From Macrostomum lignano (Eukaryota): 64,000 nucleotides of DNA. A program made the translations under genes and the position numbers. The notes below the pieces were generated by a model that saw only the letters and a list, made by a program, of their open reading frames with translations, was not told the DNA's origin and did not search any database. Shown here in pieces: positions 14,147 through 62,005 of this stretch. Numbering within the stretch: position 1 is the stretch's first letter; each line of letters opens with the position of its first letter. The stretch is taken from the NCBI GenBank assembly GCA_002269645.1, contig NIVC01000202.1, positions 620,001 to 684,000 on the forward strand, read 5' to 3'.

Positions 14147-14179
<33 letters not shown>

Positions 14180-28794: not shown

Positions 28795-30122
28795 AAGCAG
28801 GAGTCCTCTGAAGCATTGGGGGGGGGCAGCGGAGTCCTCTGAAGCATTGGGGGGGGGGCAGCGGAGTCCTCTGAAGCATTGGGGGGGGGGCAGCGGAGTC
28901 CTCTGAAGCATTGGGGGGGGGGCAGCGGAGTCCTCTGAAGCATTGGGGGGTCAGCGGAGTCCTCTGAAGCATTGGGGGGGGGCAGCGGAGTCCTCTGAAG
29001 CATTGGGGGGGGCAGCGGAGTCCTCTGAAGCATTGGGGGGGGGCAGCGGAGTCCTCTGAAGCATTGGGGGGGGGCAGCGGAGTCCTCTGAAGCATTGGGG
29101 AGGGGGCAGCGGAGTCCTCTGAAGCATTGGGGGGTCAGCGGAGTCCTCTGAAGCATTGGGGAGGGGGCAGCGGAGTCCTCTGAAGCATTGGGGTGGGGGG
29201 GGCAGCGGAGTCCTCTGAAGCATTGGGGGGGGGGCAGCGGAGTCCTCTGAAGCATTGAAGGGGCAGCGGAGTCCTCTGAAGCATTGGGGTGGGGGGCAGC
29301 AGCGCCCTCTGAAGCATTGGGGTGGGGGGGCAGCAGCGCCCACTGAAGCATTGGGGTGGGGAGCAGCGCCCACTGAAGCATTGGGGTGGGGGGCAGCGCC
29401 CACTGAAGCATTGGGGTGGGGAGCAGCGCCCTCTGAAGCATTGGGGTGGGGAGCAGCACCCTCTGAAGCATTGGGGTGGGGGGCAGCAGCGTCCTCTGAA
29501 GCATTGGGGTGGGGGGGGCAGCAGCGTCCTCTGAAGCATTGGGGTGGGGGGGGGCAGCAGCGCCCTCTGAAGCATTGGGGTGGGGGGGGGCAGCAGCGCC
29601 CTCTGAAGCATTGGGGTGTGGGGGGGGGCAGCAGCGCCCTCTGAAGCATTGGGGTGGGGGGCAGCGCCCACTGAAGCATTGGGGTGGGGAGCAGCGCCCT
29701 CTGAAGCATTGGGGTGGGGAGCAGCACCCTCTGAAGCATTGGGGTGGGGGGGCAGCAGCGTCCTCTGAAGCATTGGGGTGGGGGGGGCAGCAGCGTCCTC
29801 TGAAGCATTGGGGTGGGGGGCAGCAGCGTCCTCTGAAGCATTGGGGTGGGGGGGCAGCAGCGCCCTCTGAAGCATTGGGGTGGGGGGGGGCAGCAGCGCC
29901 CTCTGAAGCATTGGGGTGGGGGGGGCAGCAGCGCCCTCTGAAGCATTGGGGTGTGGGGGGGGGGCAGCAGCGCCCTCTGAAGCATTGGGGTGGGGAGCAG
30001 CGCCCTCTGAAGCATTGGGGTGGGGGGGGGGCAGCAGCGCCCTCTGAAGCATTGGGGTGTGGGGGGGGCAGCAGCGCCCTCTGAAGCATTGGGGTGGGGA
30101 GCAGCGCCCTCTGAAGCATTGC
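28795..30122. repeat. G-rich minisatellite with variable G runs (CTCTGAAGCATTGGGG(G)nGCAGC..), two subtypes
   Basis: Begins ~80 nt after the Vav stop codon. Confidence 0.97.
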
Positions 30123-33200: not shown

Positions 33201-36200
33201 GAGCTTATTGCACACGGTGCACATAGCCGGCGGATCGAGGGTTCGCCTCTCGAAAAAATAGCCGTTGCAATTGTAGTTCGCCGGCGCCACGTCGTCTTTG
33301 GCGCGTTGGAAAGCCTCGAGCCAGCGAGTTCGGGTCTCCCGAGTCTTGGCCAGGAACAGGTAGTTCACCCGGTCCGGCTGGTCCTTGGGCGAGGGGGTGG
33401 ACGAGCTGGAGGCGGGAGAGGCTGAGCCAGACTGCTGCTGCAGCTGCTCAGACACCAGGAATGCCCAAGTCCATTTGCCATCGCTTGAGGAGCTGGACAG
33501 CACCGAGGATGTGGTGGATCGATTGCCAGCCGGGCCAGAGGCGGACGAGTTGGCCAGCTGGTTAGGCGAGGCCAGGTCCACCTCCCGGATGAAGAGGTTG
33601 GGCTTGACAGCGAATGCGGTCTTGAAGGTGAGGCCTGGCCGCGGCTTAGCCATCATGAACATCCGGGTCCAGAGGAAGCAGACCCGCAGCTTGCTGCTCC
33701 CGTTCGGCTTGCTGACGTCGTTAGCAATGCGGAGGTCGCCGTCCTGTTCCAGACGGCCATAGTCAATCAGACGAAGACTGCCAGGCATATCCAAGCTGCT
33801 GATCTGATGTATTCGGGCGCGAGATGAGAGGCTATTAAGCGAAACTGGTCTTTGCGTTTCTTAGAAAAATATTGAAGGTTGGCTCTCATTGTTTCCGAAA
33901 CATAAATAGCGATTGTTTTTATTTATTGAAACCACAAATTTGTACACCAAATACATGGACTTCTCTAGCTAGCATCTGGACTGGAGAAGTCTACAACATG
34001 AGGCAATGGTAGGCCAAGGAGTTTCATATTAGCATCTGGAGTGGAAAGAAAAGCGCACTTTGTCATTCTAGGTAGCTTAAGAGGACAGCCTGTTGTAGTT
34101 GCTCGCGCTTATTTTGCAGCATGGTAAAAAAATGCAATGCTTTCAAATACAGTTCGAAGAAACCCTTCTGACTTATTAATTAATAAAAAATGAAAAGTTA
34201 CTAACAACTTTTGCTGTTCTTTTTGTCTATATTGGAGTAGCCTCATTGCATGCGTGTCCTTATTAGATAAAAGTGAAAAACTCGTTTCCAGTCCAGATTC
34301 TAATTTTAGAACTCCTTGCACCAATTCAAAAAATATATATTCAAGTTTCGATTTCGTTTCATTTCGAGTTGTAGAAGACTCAGGGGCGGAGCCTTCTTGT
34401 CCAGATTCTAATTTTAGAACTCCTTGCACCAATTCAAAAAATATATATTCAAGTTTCGATTTCGTTTCATTTCGAGTTGTAGAAGACTCAGGGGCGGAGC
34501 CTTCTAGTCCAGATGCTAACTGGAGAAGTCCATGCTCTTTAGTAATAACAATACTATATGCCTGTGACAAAAAAGCGCATTCGTCTATGGCCAAAACGGT
34601 TTTACGAGCTAAAATTTCAAACAGAGTAAACTGGCTGATGTTTTATCGAAGGAACGTGAAATAATTTTTTATTATTGTTCTGTGACTCTGGACAATTAAT
34701 AAACAATATATTAATAGTATTGAATCGTTTATCGTACATGCCAGAAATTGTACTGAGTGCCTTTCCAACTGACAAAGTGTTGCCACATATTGTAAAAAAT
34801 ACTCGTATTTAAACAACTATTTCCTTATAATTGACTAGACGCATTCCGAAGCGCGCATATCACAAGAGCGCACTGGCATAAGCGCATCCACACATGAGCG
34901 CACTGGCGCAAGTGACAACGAACAAGTCCACAATGCGAGTGCACAAGTAGCCTTAAATGTATACGTACACGTACGAATACTGGTATGACAAAGATTGCGG
35001 ACAAAGACTGCGCGCTTATGACACTGCGCGATTATGATACTGCGCGCTTTTAACACAGAGGAGTCCCTATGACACTGCACTTTTGACACTGCGCTTATTA
35101 CACTGTGCGCTTTTGACACCGCGCTTATGACACCGCGCTTATGACACTGCGCGCTTTTGACACTGTGCGCTTATGATACTGCGCGCTTATGACACTGCGC
35201 GCTTGTGACACTGAGCCCCTATGACACTGCGCGCTTTTGACACTGTGCGCTTATGATACTGCGCGCTTATGACACTGCGCGCTTGTGACACTGAGCCCCT
35301 ATGACACTGCGCGCTTATGACACTGCGCGCTTATGACACTGCGCGCTTATGACACTGCGCGCTTATGACACTGCGCGCTTATGACACTGCGCGCTTATGA
35401 CACTGCGCGCTTATGACACTGCGCGCTTATGACACTGCGCGCTTATGACACTGCGCGCTTGTGACACTGAGCCCCTATGACACTGCGCGCTTATGACACT
35501 GCGCGCTTATGACACTGAGCGCTTGTGACACTGAGCCCCTATGACACTGCGCGCTTGTGACACTGAGCCCCTATGACACTGCGCGCTTATGACACTGCGC
35601 GCTTATGACACTGCGCGCTTATGACACTGCGCGCTTGTGACACTGAGCGCTTGTGACACTGAGCCCCTATGACACTGCGCGCTTATGACACTGAGCGCTT
35701 GTGACACTGAGCCCCTATGACACTGCGCGCTTGTGACACTGAGCCCCTATGACACTGCGCGCTTATGACACTGCGCGCTTATGACACTGCGCGCTTATGA
35801 CACTGCGCGCTTGTGACACTGAGCCCCTATGACACTGCGCGCTTATGCAGCGCATCCTATTTAATAAGCTATAAGTTATGTTTCATTTAGTAAGGTTGTA
35901 AAAATCCGTAAAATAAAACATCACTATTAAGACTAATATTATTATTAGCTAGTAGTAGTATAGCGAGCGTTTGAACAACATTATCATAAGAGAATTGAAG
36001 AAACAGTTCGACTTCGTTTAATAAAATGCTTATAGAATGCACTAAAAAAGATACTCTAAATGCTTATAAAATGAAATGGCAAAAATGACGAGTAAATAAA
36101 TGATAGATTCTATTCACGATATCAATAATACATTAAAAACCCACACTGCGTCGTGGCTTGGACTTTCTGCCAAGCGAGAAATCCGCTAGTGGCAATATCT

Positions 36201-39200: not shown

Positions 39201-42200
39201 CATGGGATTACAGGTATGGGATTCTAGGTATGGGATTCTAAGCATGGGATTACAGGTATGGGATTCTAGGTATGGGATTTTAAGCATTGGATTACAGGGC
39301 ATGGGTTTCTAAGCATGGGATTACAGGTTATGATATTCCAGGTATGGGATTTCAGGTATGGGATTCCAGGTATGGGATCCCAGGTATGGGATTCCAGGTA
39401 TGGGATTCTAGGTTTGGAATTCCAGGCTATGGAATTTAGGTATGGGATTTCAGGTATACAACAACAACAACAGAATACGCAGTTAGCGTCACAGCGTCAG
39501 GTATAACATTTCAGATAGGTATGGGTCTATGGGATTATAGGTTTGGGATTTCAAGATAGGTTTGGGATTCCAGGTTATGGGATTCCAGGGTATGGGATTC
39601 CAGTAAGTATGGGTTTTTAAGTATAAGAGATTCAAGTGTGAGATTTCCGGCGAATGACTGATTTCAGGTATGGGATTTTTTGCGACGGCTAATGCTCTTG
39701 GGAATTTAAGCTTCGGAATTTGGGATACGAGATTTTAGCCAAAATTTATCATGACTTTAGGGCTGGTGGGATTTAAGTGTGTATGCGTATGAAATGCTGA
39801 AAGTTCAGGCGCACTGACGTCAAGCAGTGGGGAATTTTGGTTGTTTAAGGCTATGGGAGAAAAAATGTTTTTTTAAAAACGCTAGCAAAATGTCAGCATA
39901 TTAGTAACGAATGCTTACTAGCCAGAAATGCAGCGTAATACTTGAGCGTAAACCTATAAACTGGGCGCTGCAATTACTAGCATATAGTTTTTTTCAATAC
40001 TAGATTATATGAAAATACTGAACCTGCTATCAAGTTTGGCTAGGCTGGCACGCGCTGAACGATCAATGTTGTGTTGACACTCATATTGCAGCTCTTTTTT
40101 AGCGGCTGAATGGCCAACCCGTTTGTTTAATTAACCTGAGTGCGTCTCTGCTACAGTGCATCCAATCACAGTGCTGATGGAGGTGGAATAGCCAACCAAA
40201 GGGCAGATTCCAGCTGGGAGCATTGGCCAGTTTGTGGGGCAGATTCCAGCTGGGAGCATTGGCCAGTTTGTGGGGCAGATTCCAGCTGGGAGCATTGGCC
40301 AGTTTGTGGGGCAGATTCCAGCTGGGAGCATTGGCCAGTTTGTGGGGCAGATTCCAGCTGGGAGCATTGGCCAGTTTGTGGGGCAGATTCCAGCTGGGAG
40401 CATTGGCCAGTTTGTGGGGCAGATTCCAGCTGGGAGCATTGGCCAGTTTGTGGGGCAGATTCCAGCTGGGAGCATTGGCCAGTTTGTGGGGCAGATTCCA
40501 GCTGGCAGCATTGGCCAGTTTGTGGGGCAGATTCCAGCTGGGAGCCTTGGCCAGTTTGTGGGGCAGAGTCCAGCTGGGAGCATGGGTAGTTTGTGGGGCA
40601 GATTCCAGCTGGGAGCATGGGTAGTTTGTGGGGCAGATTCCAGCTGGGAGCCTTGGCCAGTTTGTGGGGCAGATTCCAGCTGGGAGCATGGGTAGTTTGT
40701 GGGGCAGATTCCAGCTGGGAGCCTTGGCCAGTTTGTGGGGCAGATTCCAGCTGGGAGCATGGGTAGTTTGTGGGGCAGATTCCAGCTGGGAGCCTTGGCC
40801 AGTTTGTGGGGCAGATTCCAGCTGGGAGCCTTGGCCAGTTTGTGGGGCAGATTCCAGCTGGGAGCATGGGTAGTTTGTGGGGCAGATTCCAGCTGGGAGC
40901 CTTGGCCAGTTTGTGGGGCAGATTCCAGCTTGGAGCATTGACAAAAAACAAAATCATGCAAGCAGCCACAAGCAAGAGGCGGTAGAAATATACAAAAACG
41001 CGGCTATTTTTAAAAAGCACAGCTGCAAGCCTTTGCAGGCTTAGTAAAAACATCGAATTTCACCCGACCGAGGCCGGGTGTTTCAGAACCCCCCGCCCTT
41101 TAATCTGGCACTGTATGCTATACATATAGCTAAGCAATACTGGCTCTGAACTCCCAGATGAGAATATCGAAATCCCATGTAGGCAAGTGAGAAAAATATG
41201 GAAAAAACGGCGCTCACGCGCACGCGAAACGGCCGCAATCGAGAGAGAGCCGATTTTGTTAATCCCCTCGATCCCAGTCCCCGCCACTCCCTCACCGTCC
41301 CTCCTAGTGCAACAACATAGCCGAGCACACATAGTGGTCATTAATCATTTTGTCCAGAAAAACACCGTCTCAGCTGGATTGTTCGACGCGTGTTTTAATA
41401 ATTACTTTACTTTATTAAATTTACAGTTTTTTGTTTCATAAAAATGCATTAGTTGTTCTATCATTGATTTGAAGACTTGTAGCTTAGTTGTCAGAGCGTC
41501 GGGATTCACGACTGAAAGGTCGGGGGTTCGCTTCCCAATCCCACTCGGAACAATTTGTGTCCTTAAGCAAGACACTTAACTCTGCATTGATTCAGTTCAA
41601 CCAGTTGTAAAATTGGTGCCAGCATTAGCTGGGGTAATTGAGGGTCCTTGGACTGAACAGCCGTACGCAGCTTCAGATGCGCCGCGCAATAGCTGCGGCT
41701 GAGCTGTCGGTTGCAGGTGTAACCACTCTGAAAACCCAAAAGACCATCAGGCGCAGGGTCTCACCTTCATAGGTCGCATAATATCTTCAACCAACAGTCG
41801 CAGAGTTTCAACATAGGTCCGCTCAGTGGTCACCAGCTCTTCCATACAGATCTCCTTAGCTGATCGTTTGGCGCCAGCATCCTCAGCATTGCCGCTGACT
41901 AGAGTCTTGTTCATGATGGTCTCGTAGACTCGCTCAGCCGCGGCGTCAACATAATTGCTGCCAACAGGCTGATCGGCGGCCGTGGGGACAGCCAGATGCT
42001 GCCGCTGCTGGCTTTTCTTAGCGGTAGCCGTGGCCATCAGGTTGCAATAATCCGAGGATAAGTCCGTCACAGCGGCGGCGTCATTGCCGTTGCTACTAGT
42101 AGCAACCGTGAAGCCTTCAATGCCGCTCTGCTTAGCTCTGGGACTGTTAGACAGCAGCGACAGGGTGCGAATGATTCTGCCAACGTTCTCTTGGCTGAGC

Positions 42201-47118: not shown

Positions 47119-50100
47119 TCAGCAATTAGCCGGCATGTAGATCGGATTGTGAAAGGAGGTGCCGCCACCGCCGGCAGCCAATCCCGTGGCGGCGTCCAGA
47201 TTGAGCTGCGGCCGGTAGCCGGCAGCCCAGCGGCCGCGGCGCCACAGACGGACCCCGATGACAATCAGACCGGCCAGAGCCGCTGCGCTGCACAGAGCCA
47301 GCACGACGGCGACCGCCACAGACGTCGTCGACGAATATGTCGCGTTGCCGCTATTCCCCGAGCTAGTAGGCGTTGTTGGCGTTGCAAAGCACTGAGGCAG
47401 GCTACAATAGGCCAATTGAAGTTGCAGCGCTGGCGATTGAGCCGCAGTCACAAAGCAGACTGGCGAAGATCCAACACCGACAGAAGACACATTGCGGCAA
47501 TAAGCAGCCGCAGAGCCCACAGTTTCGCTAACAAATTCATTCGCCTTCAGTCTGTCCGCGGCGGCTGCGTCGGTCTTGGCGACAAACGCTCTCGCGCCCA
47601 ATGAGCTTCGACGAGTCGCCAGAGCCACGTCCCAGCGGATACAGGCTCGACCGTCGCGAGCTTCGCCAACTAGACTGCGGCTTCGAAGACAAGTTGAGTA
47701 GTTAGGGTCGGGTGCTGGCGTAGCGACTGCCGGTTGCCCAGCAACTAACCGTTTGCAGATGTAGGCAAACTTGTCTGAGCAGTTGGTCGCTGAGCGGAGG
47801 CCCCAGCCGAGGCTGAGCGAGTAGCAGCTGGCGGCGGTGGACCCGGCGCTGACGGCGGCAGGCGTCAGGTGGCCGACAGCTACGGCCGGATAGAGCAGGT
47901 CGGAGCGCAATGGCCGACTGTCCGAGCGCCAACTCCAATTGCCTCCTTGGCTGGTCAGGCCCAGCCAGACTTCGCTACCAACGCTGATGGCAGCTGATCG
48001 CAGAAAGTGCAACTCGGCCGACTGGGCAAAGCCGCCCTGCTCAAGCTCGAGTAGCTGTCTGCTGCTGGCCGAACTATTGAGGCTTCTACAGGCTGCCTGA
48101 GCATCGGCGAACGTGGCAACGCTGTCAGCTGATCTGAATTCGTAGCAGGCGGAGCCAAACCGGGCAAACTTAGACGGACAGCCGGCGGAAGATGCCGGAG
48201 GGGCGACCGCGACGGGTACGCCGCTGACTCGACAGAGTGGGCGAAGTTTCTTTGAGCACTGCTCGGTGCTCATGTGGCCGGATAGCCACCAGTAGGGGCT
48301 GCTACTGAGCCGTACGCAGTCGTATTTCTAGATTGATGTTTATAAATACACGGTTGTCGAACAAAGACTAAACAAAGAGTGTTGATTTAAATCAATATTC
48401 AACGAATATATACTACTAAAGTATAAGGCCGCTCTGTGAAGTAAAATCCGTCTACAACTGTCTTTTTAGAAGCTCGAAACTTCACAAGCTCGAAACTTTA
48501 CAATCAAAATCTAGAAACTTCACAATCAAAATCTAGAAACTTCACAATCAAAATCTCGAAACTTTACAATCAAAATCTAGAAACTTCACAATCAAAATCT
48601 CGAAACTTCACAATCACAGGCTCGAAACTTCACAATCAAAATCTCGGAACTTCACAATCAAAATCTCGAAACTTCACAATCACAATCTCGAAACTTCACA
48701 ATCAAAATCTAGAAACTTCACAATCACAGGCTGGAAACTTCACAATCACAGGCTCGAAACTTCACAATCACAGGCTCGAAACTTCACAATCACAGGCTCG
48801 AAACTTCACAATCACAGGCTCGAAACTTCACAATCACAGGCTCGAAACTTCACAGTCACAGGCTCGAAACTTCACAATCACAGGCTGGAAACTTCACAAT
48901 CACAGGCTGGAAACTTCACAATCACAGGCTGGAAACTTCACAATCACAGGCTGGAAACTTCACAATCACAGGCTGGAAACTTCACAATCACAGGCTGGAA
49001 ACTTCACAATCACAGGCTCGAAACTTCACAATCACAGGCTCGAAACTTCACAATCACAGGCTCGAAACTTCACAATCACAGGCTCGAAACTTCACAGTCA
49101 CAAGCTGGAAACTTCACAATCGATTTCATTCTACATTACTTTTCAGCATTTCTACAAATAATTGCTTTAAAAAACATGCAAATCAAACGCCGACAATGGC
49201 AATAATGTCAATATCTATTGCCCGATGCAAAGTAGGTACCTAGGTCGCTTAATTCGCCTCAGAGTCGTTTAAGTAACACAGGTAAAATAGGAAAGAAGTG
49301 ACTCTAGTAGACGATTCTAAAACGACGAGACGTCCCGGTTGTCAAGTCGCTAAAAATTCGTCAAAGAGTCGCGTATGAGTTAATTGCAGTCAGGCCACAG
49401 AGTCATATCTGAGGCGTGCTGGAGTCGCTGTGGAATCACTGAGTTGCGTCTAAAGTGCACCTGCGTCACTTTATGAATTCAAATCTAATTTCGCATTTAT
49501 AACAAACTGTGAGGAAAAAATTTGAAATCAGAAATAATAATCATTCAAACTGGGGCGCATTAAACAATCAAGGCATTCATTTAAATTTTATAATCGTTAT
49601 TACTAATAGCTATTGCAATTACTGCTCTACACTCATAGCTCGGAGTTCGGCAAATACAGTTAACTTATAATTAAATTTCTACTACTTATATCCTTGGTAA
49701 GTAGTATGTGTGATTAATTTATGAGGTTACGCGTTGATGAACACTGGGTTATTCTGAAAATACATATTTGTACCGACAATACGGGGGCAATTTAAGTGGA
49801 TTTCAGTAAATAGATAAATTTAATACCCTATCAATGGCTATATATGTTTTCATTTTTTCAGCACAAAAATTGCTATTGCTTTCGATAGGAGGCAGGTCCA
49901 ATGTTCATCTTTAGATATGTTGCGTCTTTCTTATAGTTCTATTGATATTCATAAAGCTTTTTGTTCAGAAAACATTGTATATGTCTTGTGCCTAAAAACT
50001 ATTAAAATGGCACAGCTCGACTCTGGTTTTATGAATCTATCTTATCATCTCTGTTACACACATTGTTACACAGTTAGCTAAGAATAAAAGAGATTCATAA

Positions 50101-53100
50101 AACCAATGAGCCGAGCCGTGCCATTTCAATAGTAAATGCCGTGCTAGACTGTTTGCTTCTATCTGAGCTTGACTCCTATCTGTTGTTTGTTTGCTTTTAA
50201 AAGCGCTACTAGAATTCGGATTTCTAAACCTACTTCTAGTAGCGTTTTGTAAACCGGCTCTTCTGCTTTCGGAAGCGGTTCTAAAAGTTTCATTGTACTT
50301 TTAGAAACGTTCCTATTAAATTTGTAACAAAATTTCGCTTTCTGATTGTAGAAGCGCTTTAAGAATTAAGTGAAGTTGATAGATCAAGCAGTCGTCCTTA
50401 CCTGAGTATCGGCAAAAGCGGCCCAGTCCGTGGCCAGTACCGGCCGGCCGTCTGTCCAACCAAAGACTCCGCCCTCGAGGCCAGCTTTAAATTCCAATCC
50501 AATCCAGGCTGATTGTGGATTCAATAAAGAGGACTCGCGATTAGCGGCCTCCGCTAAGAGGCTGGCCATGCGCTGCAGCTGAGCCTGAGTCTGATAGGAG
50601 GCCAACTGAGCACTGGAATGGCTAGCTTTGCACTCGGCCTCGGCTTGCGGATATGGAACTGCGGTTGGCAACAGTCGATAGCAGGCGCTATCAGTTGACG
50701 ACGCGGCTACGAAGCCGTCGGGACAAGCGTAAGTTTGCCGCCCGGCTGGCTCAGGCGCTGCTGTAGACAGTCTATCGAATAGCCTGGACCGTTTGCACAG
50801 GAATGCCTGCCGAGTGTTGCAATCCATAGACCAGAACTGGCCTGGATACTTCGAATCCGGCCTGGTTTCCATAGCAACGCATAGAGACTTGGCTAGATCT
50901 ACTGACTGATCTGGCGGATTATCTAGCGGTATAAAATCTGCAAATCGCATGGGACTACCGTCCGACCACGCCGAGTAGGCATTAGCAACCGGGCTCAGAC
51001 TGGTGCTAGCGCCAAGCCAAACTTTGTCAGCGCTGAACTGCTTCAAGAATGTGAATACAGCCTTCGATTCGTTCATCGAACCAATAGAAGCCAATTGGCC
51101 AGCATTGCTCCAGTGTTTCTGGCAGATATTATTGGCATCCTGCCATGACTGTTTAGCTCCGGAATCCGTTTTGTCAACAAACAAATATTCCAAGCAACCG
51201 GAACCGTCTGGCATCGGTATAGACAGCTCGTTTGATTTGTCATCGGGCGATTTACAGACTGGTCTATCTCCGCCACCGCCGCTACTACTACCAGTAGTGT
51301 GACTAACTGGAGTTTTAGCAGGCGCTGTTGTACCAACGGTACTGCTATTGTTAGAAGCTGCAGTGGGCGTCACAGTCGTAGTAGTCGATGCTATACTACT
51401 AGCAGTAGTAGTAGTGGAACTTGTCAAAGTTGACGTAGTCAAAGGCAGGCCGGGAGTCTGACAGATGTATGGCAACGTTTTTGAGCAGACTTCCGTCATC
51501 CATTCGCCATATTTTCCACTGATAGAAACGCACGCCTTAGTATTGAAAGGCATGCTAAGCGGTAGCTTGGGATAGCCGTGACGGAATTGGAAAAACTGGA
51601 CTCCAGTGCCGCCATCTTCCGACCAGATCAAATGCTGCTGGCCTTCCACAAACGAAACGGTCATGCCTAGCCAAGCTTCATCTGATGGTGAAAGATTCTT
51701 AAGCTTCTTACTGATAACCAGCTGCTCCTGGCGGCTGTGCACGCTGGCTAGACTGCCACCGACTTTGGCGCAGGCGGCATCCGCGTCAGTCCAGTTGGCA
51801 TTAGTATTATACAGTTTATAGCATTTTCCGTTAACTGCCGGTTCCTCACCGTCTGGACAGCGCAAATTCTGGCTCTTGTTAGGCGAAAACGGATGATCAA
51901 CCAGATTGTAGCGGCACGCCATCAAAGGGTCCGTGTCGTTGCATAGCCGGGCCTCCAGACTGTTGGACTGCAGGTTCAATGCTGTGCACAGGTAGCGCTG
52001 AGTGTCCGAATTCTGGTAGTGAGAAATATGAGGTTAAATAATAAGTATGTGCTACCAGCGTAGAAGCAGATAACGGAGACCTGATGGAGCAGAAAGTTTT
52101 TCGAGATGCTGGAGAAAAAATGACAGAGCAGCACTCAGGGATGCTGGAAACCGAAGATTAAAAAAACTAGTATTGAAAGCAGATGATGGAGTAATAAAAA
52201 TAAAATCTCGGATTCTAGAAGCAGATGATGGAGCAGAAAATCTGTGATGGTGGAAACAGATGATGAGCAGGAAATCTGGGATGCTGGAAACAGATTATGG
52301 AGCAGGAACTCTGGGATGCTGGAAGCAGATGATGGAGCAGGAAATCTGGGATTCCGGAAGCAGATGATGGAGCTGAAGTCAGAAAGCATGCTGCGTACCA
52401 GTAGCACAAAAAACAAACATTTTCAACAAATAATAACAATACAAATAAAAATAAAAATGACCAACCTTTAGCTGAGTGGGCAGAATCTTAAACACAAAAT
52501 CATAGTCAGCCGAGCTGCCATCGTCCCAGGTGAGCAGCCAGCCGTGTTTGCTTTCGTCTGGCTCAACGTTGAGCCCCAGCCAGACAGCCGGGCCGTTTGT
52601 CAAGTTGACGCCAAGCTGATCGGCCAGAGCAGATAGGAAGGCCTGCTCACCTCGATGGTGGAACAGGGCCAAGCTGGCGTTCTGGTTGGCGCACTCGGCG
52701 GCCATGTCCGAGCGGTTGCCATTGGTCCCGGCAGCCAGAGTCCAGCAGATGTCGCCGTAGGCATAGAAACCCGGACGGCAGCGGCTGGCGGGACTACTGT
52801 GAAGGATGCCGATAGGCGATGGCACATGGCTTGTGTTAAGCTTGCTAGGCGGCGCCTGGCACAGGGCGGAGAAGAATCTGTCTGTGCAGGGTACGTTGTT
52901 CCACTCGCCTGGAATTATAATGATAGTAATGTTTATTAGATCGTATAGTCTTATTGCAATATTTACCATGGAATTTTAGCCAAATTCTATAGCTTTTCTG
53001 ACATCTCTAGGGAAGGTGAAACCACAGTTGCTATGCAGAACTAAGCTACCTGTATCTCTATGGAAGGTGAAACCACAGTTGCTATGCAGAACTAAGCTAC

Positions 53101-55245
53101 CTGTATCTCTATGGAAGGTGAAACCACAGTTGCTATGCAGAACTAAGCTACCTGTATCTCTATGGAAGGTGAAACCACAGTTGCTATGCAGAACTAAGCT
53201 ACCTGTATCGCTATGGAAGGTGAAACCACAGTTGCTATGCAGAACTAAGCTACCTGTATCTCTATGGAATGTGAAACCACAGTTGCTATGCAGAACTAAG
53301 CTACCTGTATCTATCTCTATGGAAGGTGAAACCACAGTTGCTATGCAGAACTAAGCTACCTGTATCTCTATGGAAGGTGAAACCACAGTTGCTATGCAGA
53401 ACTAAGCTACCTGTATCGCTATGGAAGGTGAAACCACAGTTGCTATGCAGAACTAAGCTACCTGTATCTCTATGGAATGTGAAACCACAGTTGCTATGCA
53501 GAACTAAGCTACCTGTATCTATCTCTATGGAAGGTGAAACCACAGTTGCTATGCAGAACTAAGCTACCTGTATCGCTATGGAAGGTGAAACCACAGTTGC
53601 TATGCAGAACTAAGCTACCTGTATCTCTATGGAAGGTGAAACCACAGTTGCTATGCAGAACTAAGCTACCTGTATCTCTATGGAAGGTGAAACCACAGTT
53701 GCTATGCAGAACTAAGCTACCTGTATCGCTATGGAAGGTGAAACCACAGTTGCTATGCAGAACTAAGCTACCTGTATCGCTATGGAAGGTGAAACCACAG
53801 TTGCTATGCAGAACTAAGCTACCTGTATCTCTATGGAATGTGAAACCACAGTTGCTATGCAGAACTAAGCTACCTGTATCTCTTTAGAAGGTGAAACGCG
53901 GCGCATCTGAAGGCTGCGTACGGCTGTTCAGTCCAAGGACTGGGGGGGGGGGTCGCCACACAGCCTCAATTACCCCAGCTAATGCTGGCACCCATTTTAC
54001 AGCTGGGTGAACTAAAGCAATGCATAGCAATGCAACTAAGCAATGCATAGAGTGTCTTGCTTAAGGACACAAACTGTTCCAGTGGAATCGGGAAACGAAC
54101 CCCCGACCTTCAAGTCGTAAGTCCGACCGCTCTGACCACTAGGCTACAACCTCCTTTGTATCTGTATGGAAGGTGAAGCCGCAGTTGCTATGCAAAATTA
54201 AGCTACTTGCGTCTCTAAAGTGCAACCGCAATTGCTTTGCAGAGATTTTACATTACAACCAGCTAGGCTCACCTAAGCTAACCTCCCGCTGATGCGCCAC
54301 AACGCAGGACTCTGTCTTAAACGGCGTAGACGGTTCGCCCAGTTTCCAATCGCTGTGCCGCATATCGCCGGTGCCGTTGACCTGCCAGGCCCAGTACTTA
54401 TCGGGCATGTACTCCAAGCTGATCCAGGCGTGTCCATGAGCCGTCGATCCGATTAGGGCCGTGGCTAGGAATTGCGTATTAAAATCGTTAATAACAGCTA
54501 AACTAGCCTCGGCCGACCAGTTCCTGCAGGCTTGAACAGCCAAGTCCCTATCGAATTTATCAGCTGGGGAACTTTTTGGCGAATTCAGCACCCGGTAGCA
54601 GAGGCCGCGATGCAGAGTGGCGTTGGCGCCGTCGCATCGAAGCTTCGAATCGAACTGCACCGAGTCTCTATAGGGCGACTGGATCGGCTGTCTAGCGCAC
54701 AGGGCCGCCGAACTGTTAGTGGAACCATCGATGAAGTTCAGTTTCAGAATCGAGTTGTCAATCAGTTTCAAGGCGCCGTGACGACCGCTGTAGCGAGACA
54801 GTACGGGAGTTGCGCCAGGCAGCTTGGACATGGAAAAGTCGGTGTAGTTAGCGTCCAGCCACTCCAGGCTGACCAGATCAGTGACGCGAGCCCCAGTCCA
54901 GTAGCTAGCTGAGAGCTCAGTAGTAGTGGCATTGGTCTCATTGCGACTGCTCAGCAATGCGCTAAGCAACAATTCATTGAACTGCTGATTGCGCAAGAAG
55001 ATCAATCTGCTATTGTTGCCAAGGGATAGGCAGTACTGGCGAGCCTGGCTAATGTTGAGCGGAGCCTGGCCAATCAGAATGCAGTCAGTCTGGCCAACAG
55101 GCAGCCAGCCGTCCTGGCAGCTTGGCCGGGACTCGGCAATTTGTACCAGCTGGCAAGCGATTAAAACGGTTAATAGGGCCAGCAGGCTGATGGCGCCTCG
55201 GGGAGTCTGGGGAGCAAGGCAGAGATGCTGAATAGACAGAGTCAT
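47119..55245 (-). CDS. Mannose-receptor-like type I membrane protein: signal peptide, 7 C-type lectin-like domains, Ser/Thr stalk, kringle, TM helix, FxNPxY tail (up to about 1411 aa)
   Basis: Exons 55245(or 55227/55206)-54273, 52908-52466, 52012-50402, 48327-47119 join in frame. Repeated CTLD pattern C..W..A...C....LAS(I/V)....WIG..W.DG..C..W...C....ICK; kringle-like C..G.A.DGRACIRW..YCRN..PVCF..YCSLPQC; TM VAVAVVLALCSAAALAGLIVIGV; tail SFHNPIY. True start uncertain. Confidence 0.88.
48470..49120. repeat. 22-bp minisatellite (CTTCACAATCACAGGCTCGAAA)
   Basis: Last intron of the lectin receptor. Confidence 0.96.
49240..49400. mobile_element. Degenerate copy of the 55714-55911 element
   Basis: Co-linear similarity over ~110 nt seen by eye. 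Confidence 0.5.
52070..52380. repeat. Degenerate tandem repeat (GCAGATGATGGAGCAGGAAATCTGGGATGCTGGAA)
   Basis: Lectin receptor intron 2. Confidence 0.75.
53005..53896. repeat. 51-bp minisatellite, about 17 units
   Basis: CTAAGCTACC marker at 53041 and 53092; lectin receptor intron 1. Confidence 0.97.
53897..54154 (-). mobile_element. tRNA-derived SINE, copy 4, 3'-truncated, at the edge of the 51-bp array
   Basis: Same family; lacks the terminal gcaaccgacagctc..attg block. Confidence 0.85.
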
Positions 55246-55294: not shown

Positions 55295-58229
55295 TAGGCA
55301 AGATCTTCGTCATCGAATAGGTCACCAAAATCTGCAATGGGATAGCGGGAGAGTGTAAGCGGATTAGCTCGATGAAAACGCTACTTAGGCCAATAAATAA
55401 TATAATAATAACTGATTACACCTGCTCTAACGGGCAGATGTGCAACCGACAGCTCAACCGCAGCTATTGCGCGGCGCATCTGAAGGCTGCGTACGGCTGT
55501 TCAGTCCAAGGACTGGGGGGGGGGGGTCGCTACACACCCTCAGTTACCACAGCTAATGCTGGCACCAATTTTACAGCTGGGTGAACTGAAGCAATTCAGA
55601 GTTAAGTGTCTTGCTTAAGGACACAAATTGTTCCAGTGGGTTCGGGAATCGAACCCCCCGACCTTCAAGTCGTGAGTCTGACGCTCTAACCACTGGGCTA
55701 GGCCAGGAAGCGTCCCAGAGTCGCTTGTGCAGCCCTAGAGTCGTTGCAGGTAGCACAGGTAAAATAAGAAGTAAGTGAATCTAGCTAGACGACTCTTAAA
55801 CGACGAGATGTCTCGTACAAGTCACCAAAAAGTCGTCAAAGAATCGCCTCAAAGTCTTATTTTGAGTCCTTTTATTGTCTGCGTCTCTAGGGCGACGCAA
55901 GTGACCCTGGGTGCTTCTATAATGATTAACATGTAAAGTGTAGCTACATCTTTAGCGACTCTTACGATCCTACAATTCTCAGTCACTTGAGTCGTTAAAA
56001 AGTCACACAAGGGTCGCCACAAAATTGCTAGAATTACTAGAAGTCATTTGGAATGGCTCCTTAGCAATACTTGTCACCGTGTCACGGTAACGTTTTCTTA
56101 AACGGGTTGTGCACAAAAATTGGCCCAGGGGGCGTAAACGCTCACACGTGTACACCCTGTGTGAGCATTTACGTGCTCAGGGGTCAGCAGAATGGGCATG
56201 ACTACAAAGAAACAGATTCACTAGCACTAAATTAATCGAAGCTGTGAAGCGAACATGTTCTTTCACAAAACGAATTGCAGAGTAAAATAAATAACTAGTT
56301 CGCAAAGCAGTTACCGTTGTTAAAGTCGGAGTGCACAATTTTCTCGCTGCTGGGATAATCAAAGGCCAGGTTGCCACTGCGGCCGTCGCTTACCTGAAGT
56401 GATTTTATTAAATTATAATTGATAATTAATAAAAAGCAACATCTGTAAAGATAAGAAGGCCATATCATATGATAAACACTAATAACTAGACATCTGGACT
56501 GCACATCAGTGTCTAATTAATTAATTTCAGAGAACTTATAAAATCAAATGGCATTGCATTATATTTAGCTAAAGAAATATCTAAAACACAAGCGAAATCT
56601 AATTGACTAATCAACAAACCATTCCTAAAGGACTTTATAACTTTGATAATATCCCAATTTTTATATAAAATAACTTCTATTATTTTAGTGATTATGATAT
56701 TTTCTCTCTATCAACACCATTCATTTCTTTCCACATGTCTTAAATCTACATGCTAAAAATTTTTTTTTCTACTTTTTCCATATTTACTGCAATGCCATAA
56801 GCAAGACTTTAATACTAATTTGGCTATGTGAATGATATTTTAATAGATATTTTGACATTGTAGGTCTAAAAAATAAATATGTCATGATAATTATAACCAT
56901 AAGATTAAATTCCTATTTTTTTACTTTTCTAAGAGTTTATAGATTATAAAATAAAAAATTGCATCTTTAGCCTAGTAAAAAACCTAAAAGCCCAGGCTGG
57001 AATGTTTGCTTCAGACTTTAGACTTTACACTACAAAATCTTGTATTGAAAAAATAGATTACATAAAACATTTTTAATTATTTATGTTTAAACAGTTTTGA
57101 CTAATCTTATTTATTGCATAGGATGCACTTATAATATAATGATAAATCATAAATTTATTAGATATACAATTAGTTTCATATTAAAAAATTTTGGTATTTA
57201 AATTTTTTATCAATTGTTATGAATAGTTATGTTATAATGGAATAACTTGCATATTATTTTTATGATTTATATTTGGCTTATACAAGCATACTATGTAGAA
57301 GCATAGCTAAGGGCAAATATAAATGCTAGCATAAATTAAACCTTATAAAAAATTACAGTTCTGTCATAGCTATGGATTTGATATAGGAAGTTATAGATAC
57401 ATTGATTTTGGCCTCCAAGTTATGGATATGGATATTTTTCCCATATCCTATTCAGAACCTAGTTTTGTAACTGAAACAAAAATGTTAGTATATTTACATG
57501 CATTATAGATAAAAATGTAGCAACTCCCTTGCATGCATTTTCATTTGATTATATCATATAATCATATCATATATAATGTTATGACTATATAAATATTTGT
57601 AGTTTGAAAATATTTGGAATCATCATCTAGAATATATATATCCCCTCACCTATGCAACCATGGTAGCTATCTATGAGACTGATTTCTTGGGACTTATAAT
57701 AGGCATCTAGTTCTATGATTGTTGACAATTTGACTAGGATCTGCTACTAGGCTATAACCCATACATGTACAATACCTAGCTAAGCCAGCTAATCTAGCCA
57801 TCTAATAAAAGGCCTAGCCAAGATAAGTCACAAAAATTCCCATCAAAAATAGTACTGAAGATAATAAAATATTTAGCCCTGATAATAGGCCTACATTTGA
57901 CTCATAGTTACTACTTCCATTTACTCACAATTATGATCATTTTTGCTTAGGTGTCTTTCATAGGTAAGTCAAAAAGAAAGTTGCTTACATCAGTGCCAGT
58001 GTAAATCAGGGACAGGGGGTTATGCAGGTAGGTGGCATGTATGCTAAAGGTTATAACCTACAATTACAAACTGATTATAAATTAGGCCTTTAGGTTTAAT
58101 GATTAGAAGAAAAAAAGCAACAAAACACACTAGTTTAAGCAATCTGAACAAATATTTTACCTCAGCTGTGTTGTCAATTTCACCCATTGGATCATCAGGA
58201 AACATTTCATCAGTAGGCTTGTTAGACAT
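55294..58229 (-). CDS. COPS9: COP9 signalosome subunit 9 (CSNAP/MYEOV2), 61 aa, three coding exons
   Basis: Exons 58229-58161, 56393-56315, 55331-55294 have GT/AG sites and correct phases (0, 1; 186 nt). Product MSNKPTDEMFPDDPMGEIDNTAEVSDGRSGNLAFDYPSSEKIVHSDFNNDFGDLFDDEDLA aligns by eye with COPS9 (KPAVDEMFP...[20 protein letters not shown]). Confidence 0.88.
55392..55701 (-). mobile_element. tRNA-derived SINE, copy 5, most complete (COPS9 last intron)
   Basis: Same family, plus the extended tail ..GCACATCTGCCCGTTAGAGCAGGTGTAATC and a (TTA)n-like end. Confidence 0.85.
55714..55911. mobile_element. MITE-like element with ~27-bp imperfect TIRs (CCCAG..CTGGG); related copy at ~49240-49400
   Basis: CCAGAGTCGCTTGTGCAGCCCTAGAG versus reverse complement CCAGGGTCACTTGCGTCGCCCTAGAG. 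The core CACAGGTAAAATA..CTAG..GACGA.TCT.AAACGACGAGA is shared with 49257-49330. Confidence 0.6.
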
Positions 58230-59109
58230 TATATAATGTTAGACTATACAATGATTATTATTAATTCATTTGATAGTTAAGTGTATTGTAGCCAGGTATT
58301 AATTAGCATAGAAAAGTTTATTTGAAAGTATCAGCCAATTCAAAATATTGAATTGTTGTAAGTGTGCAATGCTGCCAATGGTAAAATAGTACTCAACCCA
58401 ATATTATACCAAAACAATAGCAAGAGAAATGAAAAATCTGGTGATACAAATTACGACTTGAATAAGAAAGTACGACCCAGCGGCGATGAACAATTACGTG
58501 TAAACGATACATACACGAACACAGTGGTGGTCAACAGGTTTAACTACTTGATTTGAAATTTCAGAGAAGGTAGTTCTAATGATGGTTAGATCTAACTTAG
58601 AGTTTTTTGTTGAGAAGCAAAACAGAATTTTTTTGTCAAATTTTACTCCTATACATTAAGACACTGCAGGTATAATTTTTTAACTACGAACGTACTAGAA
58701 TTTTGTTAGAATTATATTTGAAACGAAACTCAAGAGCGTAAACAGCCACAATTTCAGTTTTCTAATGTTAAACACAATAAAAGTCATATTGATATACATG
58801 TAGATTATGATAAATTTGCATAAAAATGCCTTCTTTCGCATAAAAAATGCGTGCATATACGTAGTATAAACAAGGACGACTTTAAGTGCATTCTCGAGAA
58901 TATTCTCACTCGAGCTTTTCATTCTCAGAATTTTTGGATCGAGAATCAGGTCGTAAGCAGTAGTTAGCTATGAAATATGATTCCAATTCGTGGAGCTATC
59001 TGCTTTTTTGAGAAACCAAAAGCAGAGCTTCAATTTGACTCTTTGCTCAAAAAAGGGCAACAGCCTTCACTCTCCCATATACATGTATTTTTTTAACTCA
59101 ATCCACAGC

Positions 59110-59240
59110 AATCCGACGTCGGCAACGTCGGCAACGTCGGCCGACGTTCTCAACGTCTATCGATACGTCGGCTGAACGTCGGTGTAATTTAAAAGTACAT
59201 ATTTGTCAGCGACATCGATAGGCGTCTTGGACGTCGGATT
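59110..59240. repeat. Small inverted-repeat element rich in ACGTCGG
   Basis: Perfect 11-bp IR AATCCGACGTC / GACGTCGGATT enclosing several ACGTCGG motifs. Confidence 0.45.
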
Positions 59241-60360
59241 TCTGCACAGGGAATAATGTGAACCAATATTATAGAACTAGAGAGGCGTTTTTTGTCGTCG
59301 AATTTAAGCTGTTTTTTTAATGAACCCTAGAAATGATATATATATACTGGTAAATAAATAGCAAAAAAATCCGCCAAAAAGTTGTGAGTTCAAAAATAAT
59401 AATATGCAGCATCCACTAAGCTGCTCACATGGAGACCACACGTACCGCCGACAGAATCCGGGACGCCGGCGTTAAATAGTTATCGGGCAGTCGATAAAGT
59501 ATAATATGCGATGTGTGGTGTTACATATAAATGGATATATAATCGCATTTGAATTATGAGGTTTAAGAGTTACATGCGTGTATTGGACTGGTCCCTAATC
59601 CGTTTGAAATTCTATCTAATGAATTGATATACGAATGATACGAGCGTAGTTACGAGCTACATAATTTATTACCAAACAGGTAGGTGTTAGCTTTGTTATT
59701 TTTATCTTTCCTCTACCTTCACCTGTCATTTTTCCATAGTACAGTAGCAGATACAGAAACTACACGTAAGAGCTATGGGTGAGCAGGCCAAAACTGATAA
59801 AATATTAGCCTGCAAGTTAAAAAATTTGCGACCTTGAAATAATTGATGCAAATGGGATTATAAATGGAATTAGCAAACATCTTAGAGTATAAATAGAGTT
59901 AAGTGGGAAAATAAATGAAGCAATTAGATGCGATTATCGTCCACTTGGTCAAATATTACATATGTATAGCAATCCAATCCACGGTGTCTTTCGGGCCACT
60001 AACTAGCGACAAACCATATCAAGCATGAAATCATGCAAACACAAAGATATATAACTAGAAGCGCCTCTAGAGAGTGTCCTCGAAGGTGGAGTGATGGAGT
60101 AATTGAGTTGCCTTTCTCACATGACATCACAACTGGTCCAAATCGAAGATCAGCTTCAGCGTTAAATATAATTTGTCTAAATGAAGATGGGAAGAGTTGA
60201 GTCAAAAATCAATTATTGACTTTGACAAAATATCAGGTTTCGGAGGCTATTTAATGAAAGTTAAATGTCTTGCCCGTGCCAAACATCACCGCCCCCTTGT
60301 TTCTTAGTCGCTAGCGTTTCTTTGACAGCTATTTCTAGTCTATATTAGAACAAGCGCCAA

Positions 60361-62005
60361 ATGTTGCGTCTTGAAATCAAAGTCTTCTTCTGCATTGCTG
60401 TGGTCTTACTCAGTTATCTACCGCCGTCTTTTGAAGAAGAAACTGGTAAGACGTAGCCGAAAACTTAGATATGAGTAGTTATAATTTAATCATAATTTAC
60501 GAGCAAAGAACTCACTTACACATGAAAAGCAGAATTGCATAGAATTCTTCAAGAGCGTCAGAGAGTTTGTTTTTGTTTTGTTGTATTTAGTGACTCAAAA
60601 AATGAATATCTGTCAGAATCTTTAAGCAACAGAAATAATTGTCACGCTTTACATTACTGAAATGATGTCCGATGCAGTACTAAAAGTGCAGTTAAAATTA
60701 TGGCCCTATGTACCAATCTTGCCAGATGAGCAGGTCTATGAGCTGATCTCAGCAGCCGATTCGTGCACGGTGGACGCGTCTACTCGAATTTCAACAAAGT
60801 TTGCTGCTCAGTGCGCGCATTTGGCCAAGCAAGAGTCCAGCTGTAGATCCTTCAGCTTCTCGGACATCGATGGCGGAACTTGCATTCTGTCCGAGAGTCC
60901 GGGCTGCGTGGCGCCCTCAGCTAACAGGCTGTTTAGAAAGAAGGTGATAGGTAAGCTTGATTCAGTTTGCATGAAGTCTTTTATGGTGACGGTCTGACCA
61001 TTGTCAGGCATTTACACTGTCTCGGGGGGTGGCCCTCATGGACGAGAGCATTGCACAAGCCCCAAGCATCTTTTCATGCACGTGCCCCAGATTAATGTGG
61101 CCGGGCAACGGAGTTGAACCGGGGTTCGCGAGAGTCGGACGCGTTAACCGCTGAGCTGCTCTGATCCCTGGGAGACATAAAAAACTTTGTAAATGAGCTA
61201 TCATCCAGGAACTTTTCTTTATCGGAATCCTCATCATTCATCTTTGCTCTCTTCAGCCTGCGGTTTGCACGACCTCAGTGACTATCCGGGATACGAGTTT
61301 CAGATTGGCACTCGCTGCTTCTGGGTATCCCAGCAGCGACTGAATGGAGACGTCAGCTTCGATAGGAACTGGGCGCAATACGAGTCCGGATTTGGAGATT
61401 CTAAAAGCTTCTGGAGTGGTGGGTTGCGCGTTTGCACTGCGTAGTAGCTAGGCTTGTAAACTAACAAGCATGAGAGAAGTTCGATTTTTTAAATAAATAA
61501 AAAAGATCTTAGCAATTAAATAATTTGTTTAAACCTTATCTGCGCACAAGGTCTGCAAGCTCTGCACAGCATTACGAGTACATGCGATTCGGGCGTCACT
61601 CTCCGCATTGAGATGACAATTTTGAATGGATCAACTTTCGTTGCTGAATGGTCCAATTTTGTTGTCGAAGATGCTGCTAAAAAGTACAGAATGACCTACG
61701 GAGAAATGATTGCCGGAGGCGGCACCAATGTCAGCGGGGACTGCTTGGCCTTCCACAGAGGCATGAAATTTTCTACCGTGGACAGAGACAACGACAGAAG
61801 CGGGATCAACTGCGCTTATAAGTGGGGCCGTGGTGGCGGATTTTGGTACAACAGATGCGTCTCGTTCAGCCCGAACTCACTCTACTCAACCGAAGACATG
61901 AACAATGCAAAGTACATCTCTTGTGCCTACGTTGCGTCCGGACAGTCAGAAAACAGATATAACACGCTGCGAGAGATTCGAATGATGCTTCAGCTGAGTC
62001 CATGA
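60361..62005 (+). CDS. Secreted PAN/Apple + fibrinogen C-terminal (FReD) domain protein, 308 aa
   Basis: Exons 60361-60445, 60726-60950, 61257-61418, 61551-62005 join in frame (927 nt). Signal peptide; PAN-like CAHLAKQESSCRSFSF..GTCILS; FReD QQRLNGDVSFDRNWAQYESGFG..FWSGLQALH..MKFSTVDRDND..CA..GGGFWYNRC. Confidence 0.88.
61020..61158 (-). mobile_element. Probable second tRNA-derived SINE family head (FReD gene intron 2)
   Basis: Reverse complement AGCTCAGCGGTTAACGCG..CCGGTTCAACTCC gives A and B boxes. Single copy; 3' boundary unknown. Confidence 0.45.

What the first reader, a model, noticed from the sequence alone, without database searches (positions are those of the whole stretch)
56389..58453. 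~2-kb CpG desert whose edges coincide with COPS9 splice sites
Seen: my manual scan found a single CG (56593) in ~2060 nt, while similarly AT-rich flanks (58454-60360, 45-46 kb) and all other exons have many. One edge is the exon-2 acceptor (56394); the other is the C|G of a candidate 5'UTR donor (CAAGTC|GTAATT, 58454). The enclosed first coding exon also has no CpG. Established: germline 5mC deamination depletes CpG, and invertebrate gene-body methylation targets housekeeping genes. Inference: a sharply delimited methylation domain in the 5' gene body, in a lineage thought to have little methylation.
Basis: partly seen in the sequence, partly recalled or inferred. Interest (0 to 1): 0.7.

Follow-up and report, generated by a model that had tools for sequence, protein, structure and literature searches.

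The report
CpG-free block in flatworm COPS9
A 2-kb stretch covering the first coding exon and long intron of a housekeeping gene (COPS9) in the flatworm Macrostomum has lost almost all its CpG dinucleotides, most likely as the mutational scar of long-standing DNA methylation confined to that spot in a genome that otherwise looks unmethylated.

Summary
Window 56388-58453 has 1 CpG (56593) where about 40 are expected (o/e 0.025, 95% CI 0.0006-0.14; P about 6e-15), while GpC is abundant (65). All other long CpG gaps in the window are CpG-free minisatellites; this one is unique, non-repetitive DNA. Non-repeat DNA elsewhere has o/e 0.90 whatever its GC content. The block covers COPS9 intron 1 (56394-58160), coding exon 1 (58161-58229) and 224 nt upstream. 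The organism is Macrostomum lignano or a very close relative. Reviews say this flatworm retains DNMT1 and DNMT3 and has low-level 5mC, with the genomic pattern undescribed. Three results favour CpG decay in place: a TpG/CpA excess, CpG avoidance at synonymous sites of exon 1 (0/9 against 5/10 in exon 2), and a simulation that reproduces the depletion, the TpG/CpA and CC/GG rise and a 6-point GC drop. I found no sign of a transposon, mitochondrial or phage origin. The best reading is a footprint of focal, long-term germline methylation (confidence 0.6). The match of the edges to splice sites holds only within the available resolution: about 375 nt on the left and about 90 nt on the right. The 5'UTR donor is unverified, and no methylation was measured. 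Interest is moderate.

The parts
56388..58453 (.). CpG desert: 2066 nt, 27.7% G+C, 1 CpG against about 40 expected, and 65 GpC
56593..56594 (.). The only CpG inside the desert, and so the only site where present-day methylation of the block could be read
56394..58160 (-). COPS9 intron 1 (1767 nt, phase 0). Donor GAG|gtaaaa at 58160; acceptor cttcag| ending at 56394. Unique sequence with no ORF, repeat, Rfam or Pfam signal
58161..58229 (-). COPS9 coding exon 1 (MSNKPTDEMFPDDPMGEIDNTAE). No CpG; GC3 0.35; 0 of 9 third positions before a G-starting codon are C
   Evidence: the DEMFP motif aligns to PDB COP9 signalosome subunit 9 and to Pfam PF15004
58230..58453 (-). 224 nt upstream of the ATG, with 0 CpG (4.6 expected). 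This is 5'UTR, an outron or a possible 83-nt 5'UTR intron (58372-58454); which of these is unknown
58454..58516 (-). Cluster of 7 CpG in 63 nt immediately outside the right edge. It is a putative core promoter or 5'UTR exon of COPS9
   Evidence: function inferred
56295..56393 (-). COPS9 exon 2 coding part (VSDGRSGNLAFDYPSSEKIVHSDFNNGNCFAN, then stop). It has 7 CpG, GC3 0.69, and 5 of 10 NNC|G junctions, so it is not depleted

Best explanation
The block is the mutational footprint of long-term, near-complete CpG methylation in the germline of a Macrostomum flatworm. The methylation is confined to the 5' and middle part of the small COPS9 transcription unit, from just downstream of the promoter CpG cluster to about the end of the single long intron. 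Methylated cytosines deaminate to thymine, so CpG is converted to TpG/CpA many times faster than other sites mutate. Over millions of generations this empties the domain of CpG, raises TpG/CpA and lowers G+C. The promoter cluster, the last exon and the rest of the window stay unmethylated and keep a normal CpG content. Shown here: the CpG-specific depletion, its limits, the reciprocal dinucleotide shifts, the effect on synonymous sites, and the absence of repeat or foreign signatures. Inferred: that 5mC is the cause, that the targeting is of the gene-body type, and that it acts in the germline.
For: (1) CpG 1 against about 40 expected while GpC is 65; P about 6e-15. (2) Background o/e is 0.90 and does not depend on GC. 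The right edge is not a composition edge (G+C 0.27-0.32 on one side, 0.31-0.37 on the other), yet o/e jumps from 0 to 1.13. (3) TpG+CpA exceed the control level by about 26 dinucleotides, the same order as the roughly 36 missing CpG. The excess is symmetric (TG o/e 1.19, CA 1.22). (4) In exon 1, none of the 9 codons followed by a G-starting codon ends in C. The figure is 5/10 in exon 2 and 35% (479/1350) in other exons of the window (P about 0.02-0.03). Native coding sequence was therefore affected in place. (5) I simulated a background with equilibrium G+C of 0.37 plus a 20-80x boost of CpG transitions. It gives CpG o/e 0.14-0.04, CA/TG 1.25-1.27, CC/GG 1.09-1.14 and G+C 0.31. Observed values are 0.025, 1.21, 1.29 and 0.277. 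(6) The organism is M. lignano or a close relative. It is reported to retain DNMT1 and DNMT3 and to have low-level 5mC (PMC11292947, PMC9246332, PMC10658182). (7) The gene is COPS9, a constitutive signalosome subunit. That is the class of gene invertebrates usually methylate (PMC11292947 abstract; own knowledge).
Against: No methylation data were available. The last exon, with 7 CpG mostly at synonymous junctions, is fully spared, whereas invertebrate gene-body methylation normally covers exons through to the 3' end (own knowledge). The depletion is deeper than usual invertebrate footprints (about 0.3-0.6, own knowledge) and needs a CpG rate boost of at least about 20x. None of the other genes in the window is depleted, although Cabin1-like, ClC-3/4/5 and VAV are broadly expressed in other animals. 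G+C is about 3 points lower, and CC/GG higher, than the simple model gives. With only one locus, the type of targeting (gene body or something else) cannot be settled.
Confidence: 0.6

Rival explanations
1. This is a methylation footprint, but of the genome-defence type. An old transposon or other silenced element in intron 1 was methylated and the mark spread over exon 1 and the 5' leader. The element has since decayed beyond recognition.
For: The depletion is centred on the long unique intron, and the last exon is spared, which fits spreading from an intronic source better than transcription-coupled targeting. Some invertebrates methylate TEs (PMC11292947 abstract).
Against: No TIR, LTR, target-site duplication, tandem structure or second copy in 64 kb. 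No protein-domain remnant in six frames and no ORF. CpG-bearing minisatellites elsewhere in the window show no CpG hypermutability: 14/648 against 113/2456. The limits of the block track the transcription unit.
Confidence: 0.15
2. CpG-poor DNA arrived ready-made. One or two insertions of foreign, organellar or mobile AT-rich DNA, already CpG-depleted, now make up the intron and leader, with no local methylation involved.
For: G+C (27.7%) is 8-10 points below other non-coding DNA. The dinucleotide signature distance to native segments is high even without CG/CA/TG (delta* 173 against 76-101 for most controls).
Against: Conserved exon 1 lies inside the block and shows the same CpG avoidance at synonymous sites, and both sides of it are depleted, so a single insertion cannot explain the block. 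One native control segment has a similar delta* (164). The decay simulation reproduces the GC drop and the CC/GG rise. There is no phage match. Apart from a single ARAGORN mitochondrial tRNA-Thr call, taken as chance in AT-rich DNA, there is no mitochondrial ORF or tRNA pattern. No Pfam or Rfam hit.
Confidence: 0.08
3. A CpG-specific process without 5mC. One form is selection against CpG in this 5' region, for example to avoid binding by CpG-reading factors or cryptic promoters. Another is an unknown context-dependent mutational bias tied to high transcription.
For: The block runs roughly from the start of transcription to the end of the first intron. Methylation itself is unmeasured.
Against: No known mechanism removes about 40 CpG from 2 kb of intron by selection. 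TG and CA excesses are symmetric, and G/C and A/T skews change sign along the block, which argues against strand-asymmetric transcription-coupled damage. Other genes in the window show nothing similar.
Confidence: 0.1
4. Artefact: an assembly chimera, or systematic consensus errors at modified bases that wrote CpG as TpG/CpA.
For: The sequencing platform and polishing history of the window are unknown to me.
Against: Exon 1 and exon 2 splice in frame across canonical GT..AG into a 55-aa protein. That protein matches COPS9 over both exons, so there is no join between genomes. An error process erasing 39 of 40 sites while leaving exon 1 with only synonymous-looking outcomes is unlikely. Such errors would in any case imply methylation.
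Confidence: 0.04

Closest known systems
Mosaic gene-body methylation of invertebrates and its CpG o/e footprint (Ciona, Apis, Crassostrea, annelids, cnidarians)
   Same: CpG depletion limited to a transcription unit of a constitutively expressed gene. The promoter is spared, there is a reciprocal TpG/CpA gain, and the surrounding genome has o/e near 1. DNMT1 and DNMT3 are present in the species according to the literature.
   Different: The depletion is much deeper (0.025 against the typical 0.3-0.6). The last exon is completely spared. Only one of about eight genes in 64 kb is affected. The species has very low global 5mC and no published pattern that I could read.
5'-biased gene-body methylation of insects (Hymenoptera, Lepidoptera)
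   Same: The signal is concentrated in the first 1-2 kb downstream of the start of transcription and fades before the 3' end.
   Different: In insects methylation falls mainly on exons. Here the bulk of the block is intron, and the only sizeable exon outside it is untouched.
Vertebrate-type CpG depletion of AT-rich DNA with unmethylated CpG-island promoters
   Same: The depth of depletion, the CA/TG value of about 1.2, the raised CC/GG, and a small CpG cluster at the 5' edge resemble a methylated vertebrate intron next to a CpG island.
   Different: The rest of the window is not depleted (o/e 0.90), so this is an island of depletion in an undepleted genome. That is the inverse of the vertebrate arrangement.
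Repeat-induced point mutation (RIP) AT-rich blocks of fungi
   Same: A sharply bounded AT-rich block with a dinucleotide-specific loss.
   Different: RIP depletes CpA/TpG and enriches TpA in duplicated DNA. Here CpA/TpG are enriched ((CA+TG)/(AC+GT) 1.48), the DNA is single-copy and the organism is an animal.

Membership tests
Germline CpG-methylation footprint (gene-body type) | CpG o/e strongly below the local background, specific to CpG and not to GpC or to G+C content | tested here: met
   o/e 0.025 against 0.90 background; GpC 65; no dependence on GC bin
Germline CpG-methylation footprint (gene-body type) | Reciprocal, strand-symmetric excess of TpG and CpA | tested here: met
   TG 116 observed against 97.5 expected; CA 134 against 109.7; rho 1.21 against 1.01-1.14 in controls. 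The excess of about 26 is modest and the controls vary
Germline CpG-methylation footprint (gene-body type) | The depleted domain lies within a transcription unit and the promoter is spared | tested here: met
   The block covers the leader, exon 1 and intron 1 of COPS9. A 7-CpG cluster lies at 58454-58516 just outside it. The transcription start site itself is not mapped.
Germline CpG-methylation footprint (gene-body type) | Exons are affected at least as much as introns, through to the 3' end of the gene | tested here: not met
   Exon 1 is affected (0/9 NNC|G), but the last exon is unaffected (7 CpG, 5/10 NNC|G)
Germline CpG-methylation footprint (gene-body type) | The species has maintenance and de novo CpG methyltransferases (DNMT1, DNMT3) | not tested
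   Taken from the literature for M. lignano (PMC11292947, PMC9246332). The primary paper (Wasik 2015) is not held. The species assignment rests.
Germline CpG-methylation footprint (gene-body type) | Residual CpGs of the domain are methylated in germ cells | not testable with these tools
   Needs bisulfite, EM-seq or long-read 5mC calls. Only CpG 56593 remains in the block.
Transposable-element or other insertion | Terminal repeats or target-site duplication, coding remnants, or further copies | tested here: not met
   Only 64 kb of the genome could be searched for copies.
Nuclear copy of mitochondrial DNA | Mitochondrial-code ORFs, or tRNA or rRNA genes | tested here: not met
   No long ORF under codes 4, 5 or 9. 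Only one marginal mt-tRNA call, as expected by chance in AT-rich DNA. No Rfam hit at E<=1.
COPS9 / MYEOV2 (PF15004) | A protein of about 57 aa with an N-terminal DEMFP motif and a central EKxVHxDF motif | tested here: met
   Pfam E 1.4e-5, 25.9 bits, just under the gathering score of 27, covering residues 6-50. The only PDB match is COP9 signalosome subunit 9, E 0.013, residues 6-49.

The most novel reading that the evidence does not exclude
Macrostomum may use its retained DNMT1/DNMT3 in an unusual, very sparse mode. In this reading a small set of sharply bounded 5' gene-body domains, running from the promoter edge to the end of the first long intron, is methylated almost completely and stably in the germline. 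These domains have mutated away nearly all their own CpG substrate. That would explain why global 5mC is measured as 'low' in a flatworm that keeps the whole machinery.
Probability: 0.2. Interest if true: 0.65.

Novelty: new member of a known kind. Interest (0 to 1): 0.42.

Why it matters
Flatworms are usually cited as a phylum that has lost, or nearly lost, cytosine methylation. Macrostomum is the exception that keeps DNMT1 and DNMT3. [quoted passage not shown] A CpG desert this deep and this sharply bounded, in a background with o/e 0.9, gives a sequence-only marker for where that machinery has acted over evolutionary time. If such deserts recur at the 5' gene bodies of constitutive genes, they would map the flatworm's methylation targets without any bisulfite data. 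They would also show that methylated-CpG counts underestimate the extent of methylated domains, because those domains have exhausted their CpGs. If this desert is a one-off, it is a local curiosity.

Tried and rejected
Chance is rejected. AT-richness as the cause is rejected, because o/e is flat across GC bins outside the block. Tandem repeat as the cause explains every other long CpG gap but not this one. TE or inverted/direct repeat structure and second copies: none found. Coding remnants in six frames: none. Mitochondrial origin: no support. Phage DNA similarity: none. Structured RNA: none at gathering threshold or at E<=1. RIP-type signature: the direction is opposite. A foreign dinucleotide signature is inconclusive: delta* is high (173) but one native control reaches 164, and sampling error on about 50-count dinucleotides is large. 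Comparative data could not be reached. COPS9 and the neighbouring lectin found no homologues in the indexed protein search. The best ClC hit's contig was uninformative. The primary M. lignano methylation paper (Wasik 2015) is not held. Further literature searches found only secondary citations.
Full report
OBSERVATION. Between the CpGs at 56387 and 58454 there is a single CpG, at 56593. The 2066 nt from 56388 to 58453 are 27.7% G+C and contain 1 CpG, 65 GpC, 116 TpG and 134 CpA. Base composition predicts 39.7 CpG. In 20,000 shuffles the mean was 39.7, the SD 5.4 and the minimum 18. Using local composition and the window's own background o/e of 0.9, P(<=1) is 6e-15. The 95% interval for o/e inside the block is 0.0006-0.14.

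IS IT SPECIAL WITHIN THE WINDOW? A sliding scan shows other long CpG gaps (2707-4919, 1375-2477, 40143-40980, 19694-20491 and about ten more). Every one of them lies in a minisatellite array whose repeat unit has no CpG. About a third of the window is such arrays. After masking them, the COPS9 gap carries 36 expected CpG and the next largest gap carries 7.8. Non-repeat DNA outside the block has o/e 0.90. In 200-nt bins it is 0.83-1.10 at every G+C level, including 27-32%. AT-rich non-coding controls have rho(CG) 0.74-1.13, and exons have 0.81-1.09. AT-richness therefore does not explain the desert. The right edge is not a composition step at all: G+C is about 0.27-0.32 on one side and 0.31-0.37 on the other, while o/e goes from 0 to 1.13.

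GENE ANATOMY. On the minus strand, ATG at 58229 opens a 23-codon exon ending GAG|gtaaaa (donor at 58160). An acceptor cttcag| ending at 56394 leads into exon 2 from 56393, and the stop codon ends at 56295. The spliced 55-aa product matches Pfam PF15004 (MYEOV2/COPS9) over residues 6-50 with E 1.4e-5 and 25.9 bits, just under the curated 27. Its only PDB match at E<=10 is COP9 signalosome subunit 9, across both exons. The desert therefore consists of intron 1 (1767 nt), coding exon 1 (69 nt) and 224 nt upstream of the ATG. Just outside the right edge lie 7 CpG in 63 nt (58454-58516), plausibly the core promoter or a first non-coding exon. Nothing here can show that either is used. A likelihood scan places the left edge anywhere in 56388-56762 and the right edge in 58367-58453. 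The coincidence with splice sites is therefore compatible with the data but not demonstrated. On the left it is confounded with the ordinary exon/intron composition change.

ORGANISM. The PH-C1 exon of the VAV gene in the window matches UniRef100_A0A1I8G5V4 of Macrostomum lignano at 97% identity. The other matched exons are 93-100% identical. The window is therefore from M. lignano or a very close relative. Reviews state that M. lignano, unlike planarians and parasitic flatworms, retains DNMT1 and DNMT3 and has low-level 5mC (PMC11292947, PMC10658182). [quoted passage not shown] The primary report (Wasik et al. 2015) was not available to me.

WHAT MADE THE DESERT? Four lines of evidence point to CpG decay in place.

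First, the loss is specific to CpG and comes with a symmetric TpG/CpA excess. TG o/e is 1.19 and CA o/e is 1.22. (CA+TG)/(AC+GT) is 1.48 against 1.10-1.33 in controls. The excess is about 26 dinucleotides above control level, against about 36 missing CpG.

Second, conserved exon 1, inside the block, avoids CpG at synonymous sites. None of its 9 codons that precede a G-starting codon ends in C. The figure is 5 of 10 in exon 2 and 35% in other exons of the window (P about 0.02-0.03). This also explains most of exon 1's low GC3 of 0.35, against 0.53-0.75 elsewhere.

Third, I simulated a neutral background with equilibrium G+C of 0.37 plus a 20-80-fold boost of CpG transitions. It settles at CpG o/e 0.14-0.04, CA/TG 1.25-1.27, CC/GG 1.09-1.14 and G+C 0.31. 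That is close to the observed 0.025, 1.21, 1.29 and 0.277. The low G+C and the odd CC/GG value, which at first looked foreign, are therefore largely expected by-products of long-term CpG hypermutability.

Fourth, I found no support for the alternatives. There are no terminal or internal repeats and no second copy in the window. There are no ORFs or domain remnants in six frames. There is no mitochondrial signature, no phage similarity and no structured RNA. A single insertion cannot explain depletion on both sides of, and within, a conserved exon.

IS THE REST OF THE WINDOW UNMETHYLATED? Besides the o/e of 0.9, the minisatellites that do contain CpG give an internal test. Copy-to-consensus transitions at CpG positions are 14/648 (2.2%), against 113/2456 (4.6%) at other C/G positions. 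There is therefore no CpG hypermutability in those arrays, although array variants are not independent events. The COPS9 block is a focal exception.

MECHANISM AND ITS WEAK POINTS. The best reading, at confidence 0.6, is a stable and near-complete germline methylation domain over the 5' and middle part of COPS9. The promoter cluster and the 3' terminal exon are excluded. The weak points are these. Methylation was not measured. The last exon is wholly spared, although invertebrate gene-body methylation usually covers exons to the 3' end. The depletion is as deep as, or deeper than, fully methylated vertebrate AT-rich DNA and needs a rate boost of at least about 20x. Only one of about eight genes in the window shows it. 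One possible reason for the spared last exon is its position about 1 kb upstream of the next gene's start (lectin ATG at 55245), which might keep it in an unmethylated promoter zone. This is speculation. Rival readings are a decayed intronic element as the methylation target (0.15), ready-made CpG-poor inserted DNA (0.08), a CpG-specific process without 5mC (0.10) and an artefact (0.04).

COMPARISON AND NOVELTY. The block works like the CpG o/e footprints of mosaic gene-body methylation known from Ciona, bees, oysters, annelids and cnidarians. It resembles the 5'-biased insect variant in extent. It differs in depth, in the spared terminal exon and in rarity. I file it as a new member of a known kind. 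It is interesting mainly because it occurs in the one flatworm lineage that keeps DNMT1/3 and whose methylation pattern is undescribed in the literature I could read. The most novel reading not excluded (probability about 0.2) is a sparse mode of near-total methylation of a few 5' gene-body domains. Those domains would have consumed their own CpGs, which would also explain the low global 5mC.

VERDICT. Interest is moderate (0.42). The decisive tests are 5mC calls at CpG 56593 and the flanking CpGs, a genome-wide scan for non-repeat CpG deserts against gene models, and polarised substitutions from related Macrostomum loci.

Noticed in passing
whole window; e.g. 1411-2421, 2674-4984, 19705-20574, 40201-40940, 53003-53897: About 32% of the window is minisatellite arrays (units 14-75 nt), mostly in introns of the Cabin1-like, nAChR-like and VAV genes. 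About 19 of 33 consensus units contain no CpG and several are very TG/CA-rich (o/e 1.5-1.8). Whether that reflects founder units or past CpG decay is open.
   Followed up: partly
35007-35847 and ten other CpG-bearing arrays: Arrays whose unit contains CpG (for example the 16-mer ACTGCGCGCTTATGAC x53) show no excess of transitions at CpG positions among copies: 14/648 against 113/2456 at other C/G. This argues that these repeats are not methylated in the germline.
   Followed up: yes
58454-60400, especially 59114-59180: The AT-rich region upstream of COPS9 is slightly CpG-enriched (o/e 1.1-1.4). It holds a dense CpG cluster that includes ACGTCGGCA x3. It may be a promoter region shared with, or divergent from, another gene.
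   Followed up: no
47119-55245 (minus strand) and 61613-62005 (plus strand): There is a tandem group of C-type-lectin genes, one with a C-terminal membrane anchor, and a fibrinogen-related exon next to COPS9. The 330-aa lectin first exon found no homologue in the indexed protein search.
   Followed up: partly
10479-10752: An in-frame 24-nt coding repeat (AGTGQASE, about 11 copies) lies inside a long exon of the Cabin1-like gene.
   Followed up: no
28796-30121: A G-run-containing 30-32-nt array of about 40 copies has 68% G+C and low CpG o/e (0.28-0.45) together with high TG/CA.
   Followed up: no
6666-16020: The Cabin1-like gene has unusually long exons (0.9-1.5 kb, 60-66% G+C, CpG o/e 0.93-1.07), separated by introns made almost entirely of minisatellites.
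   Followed up: no
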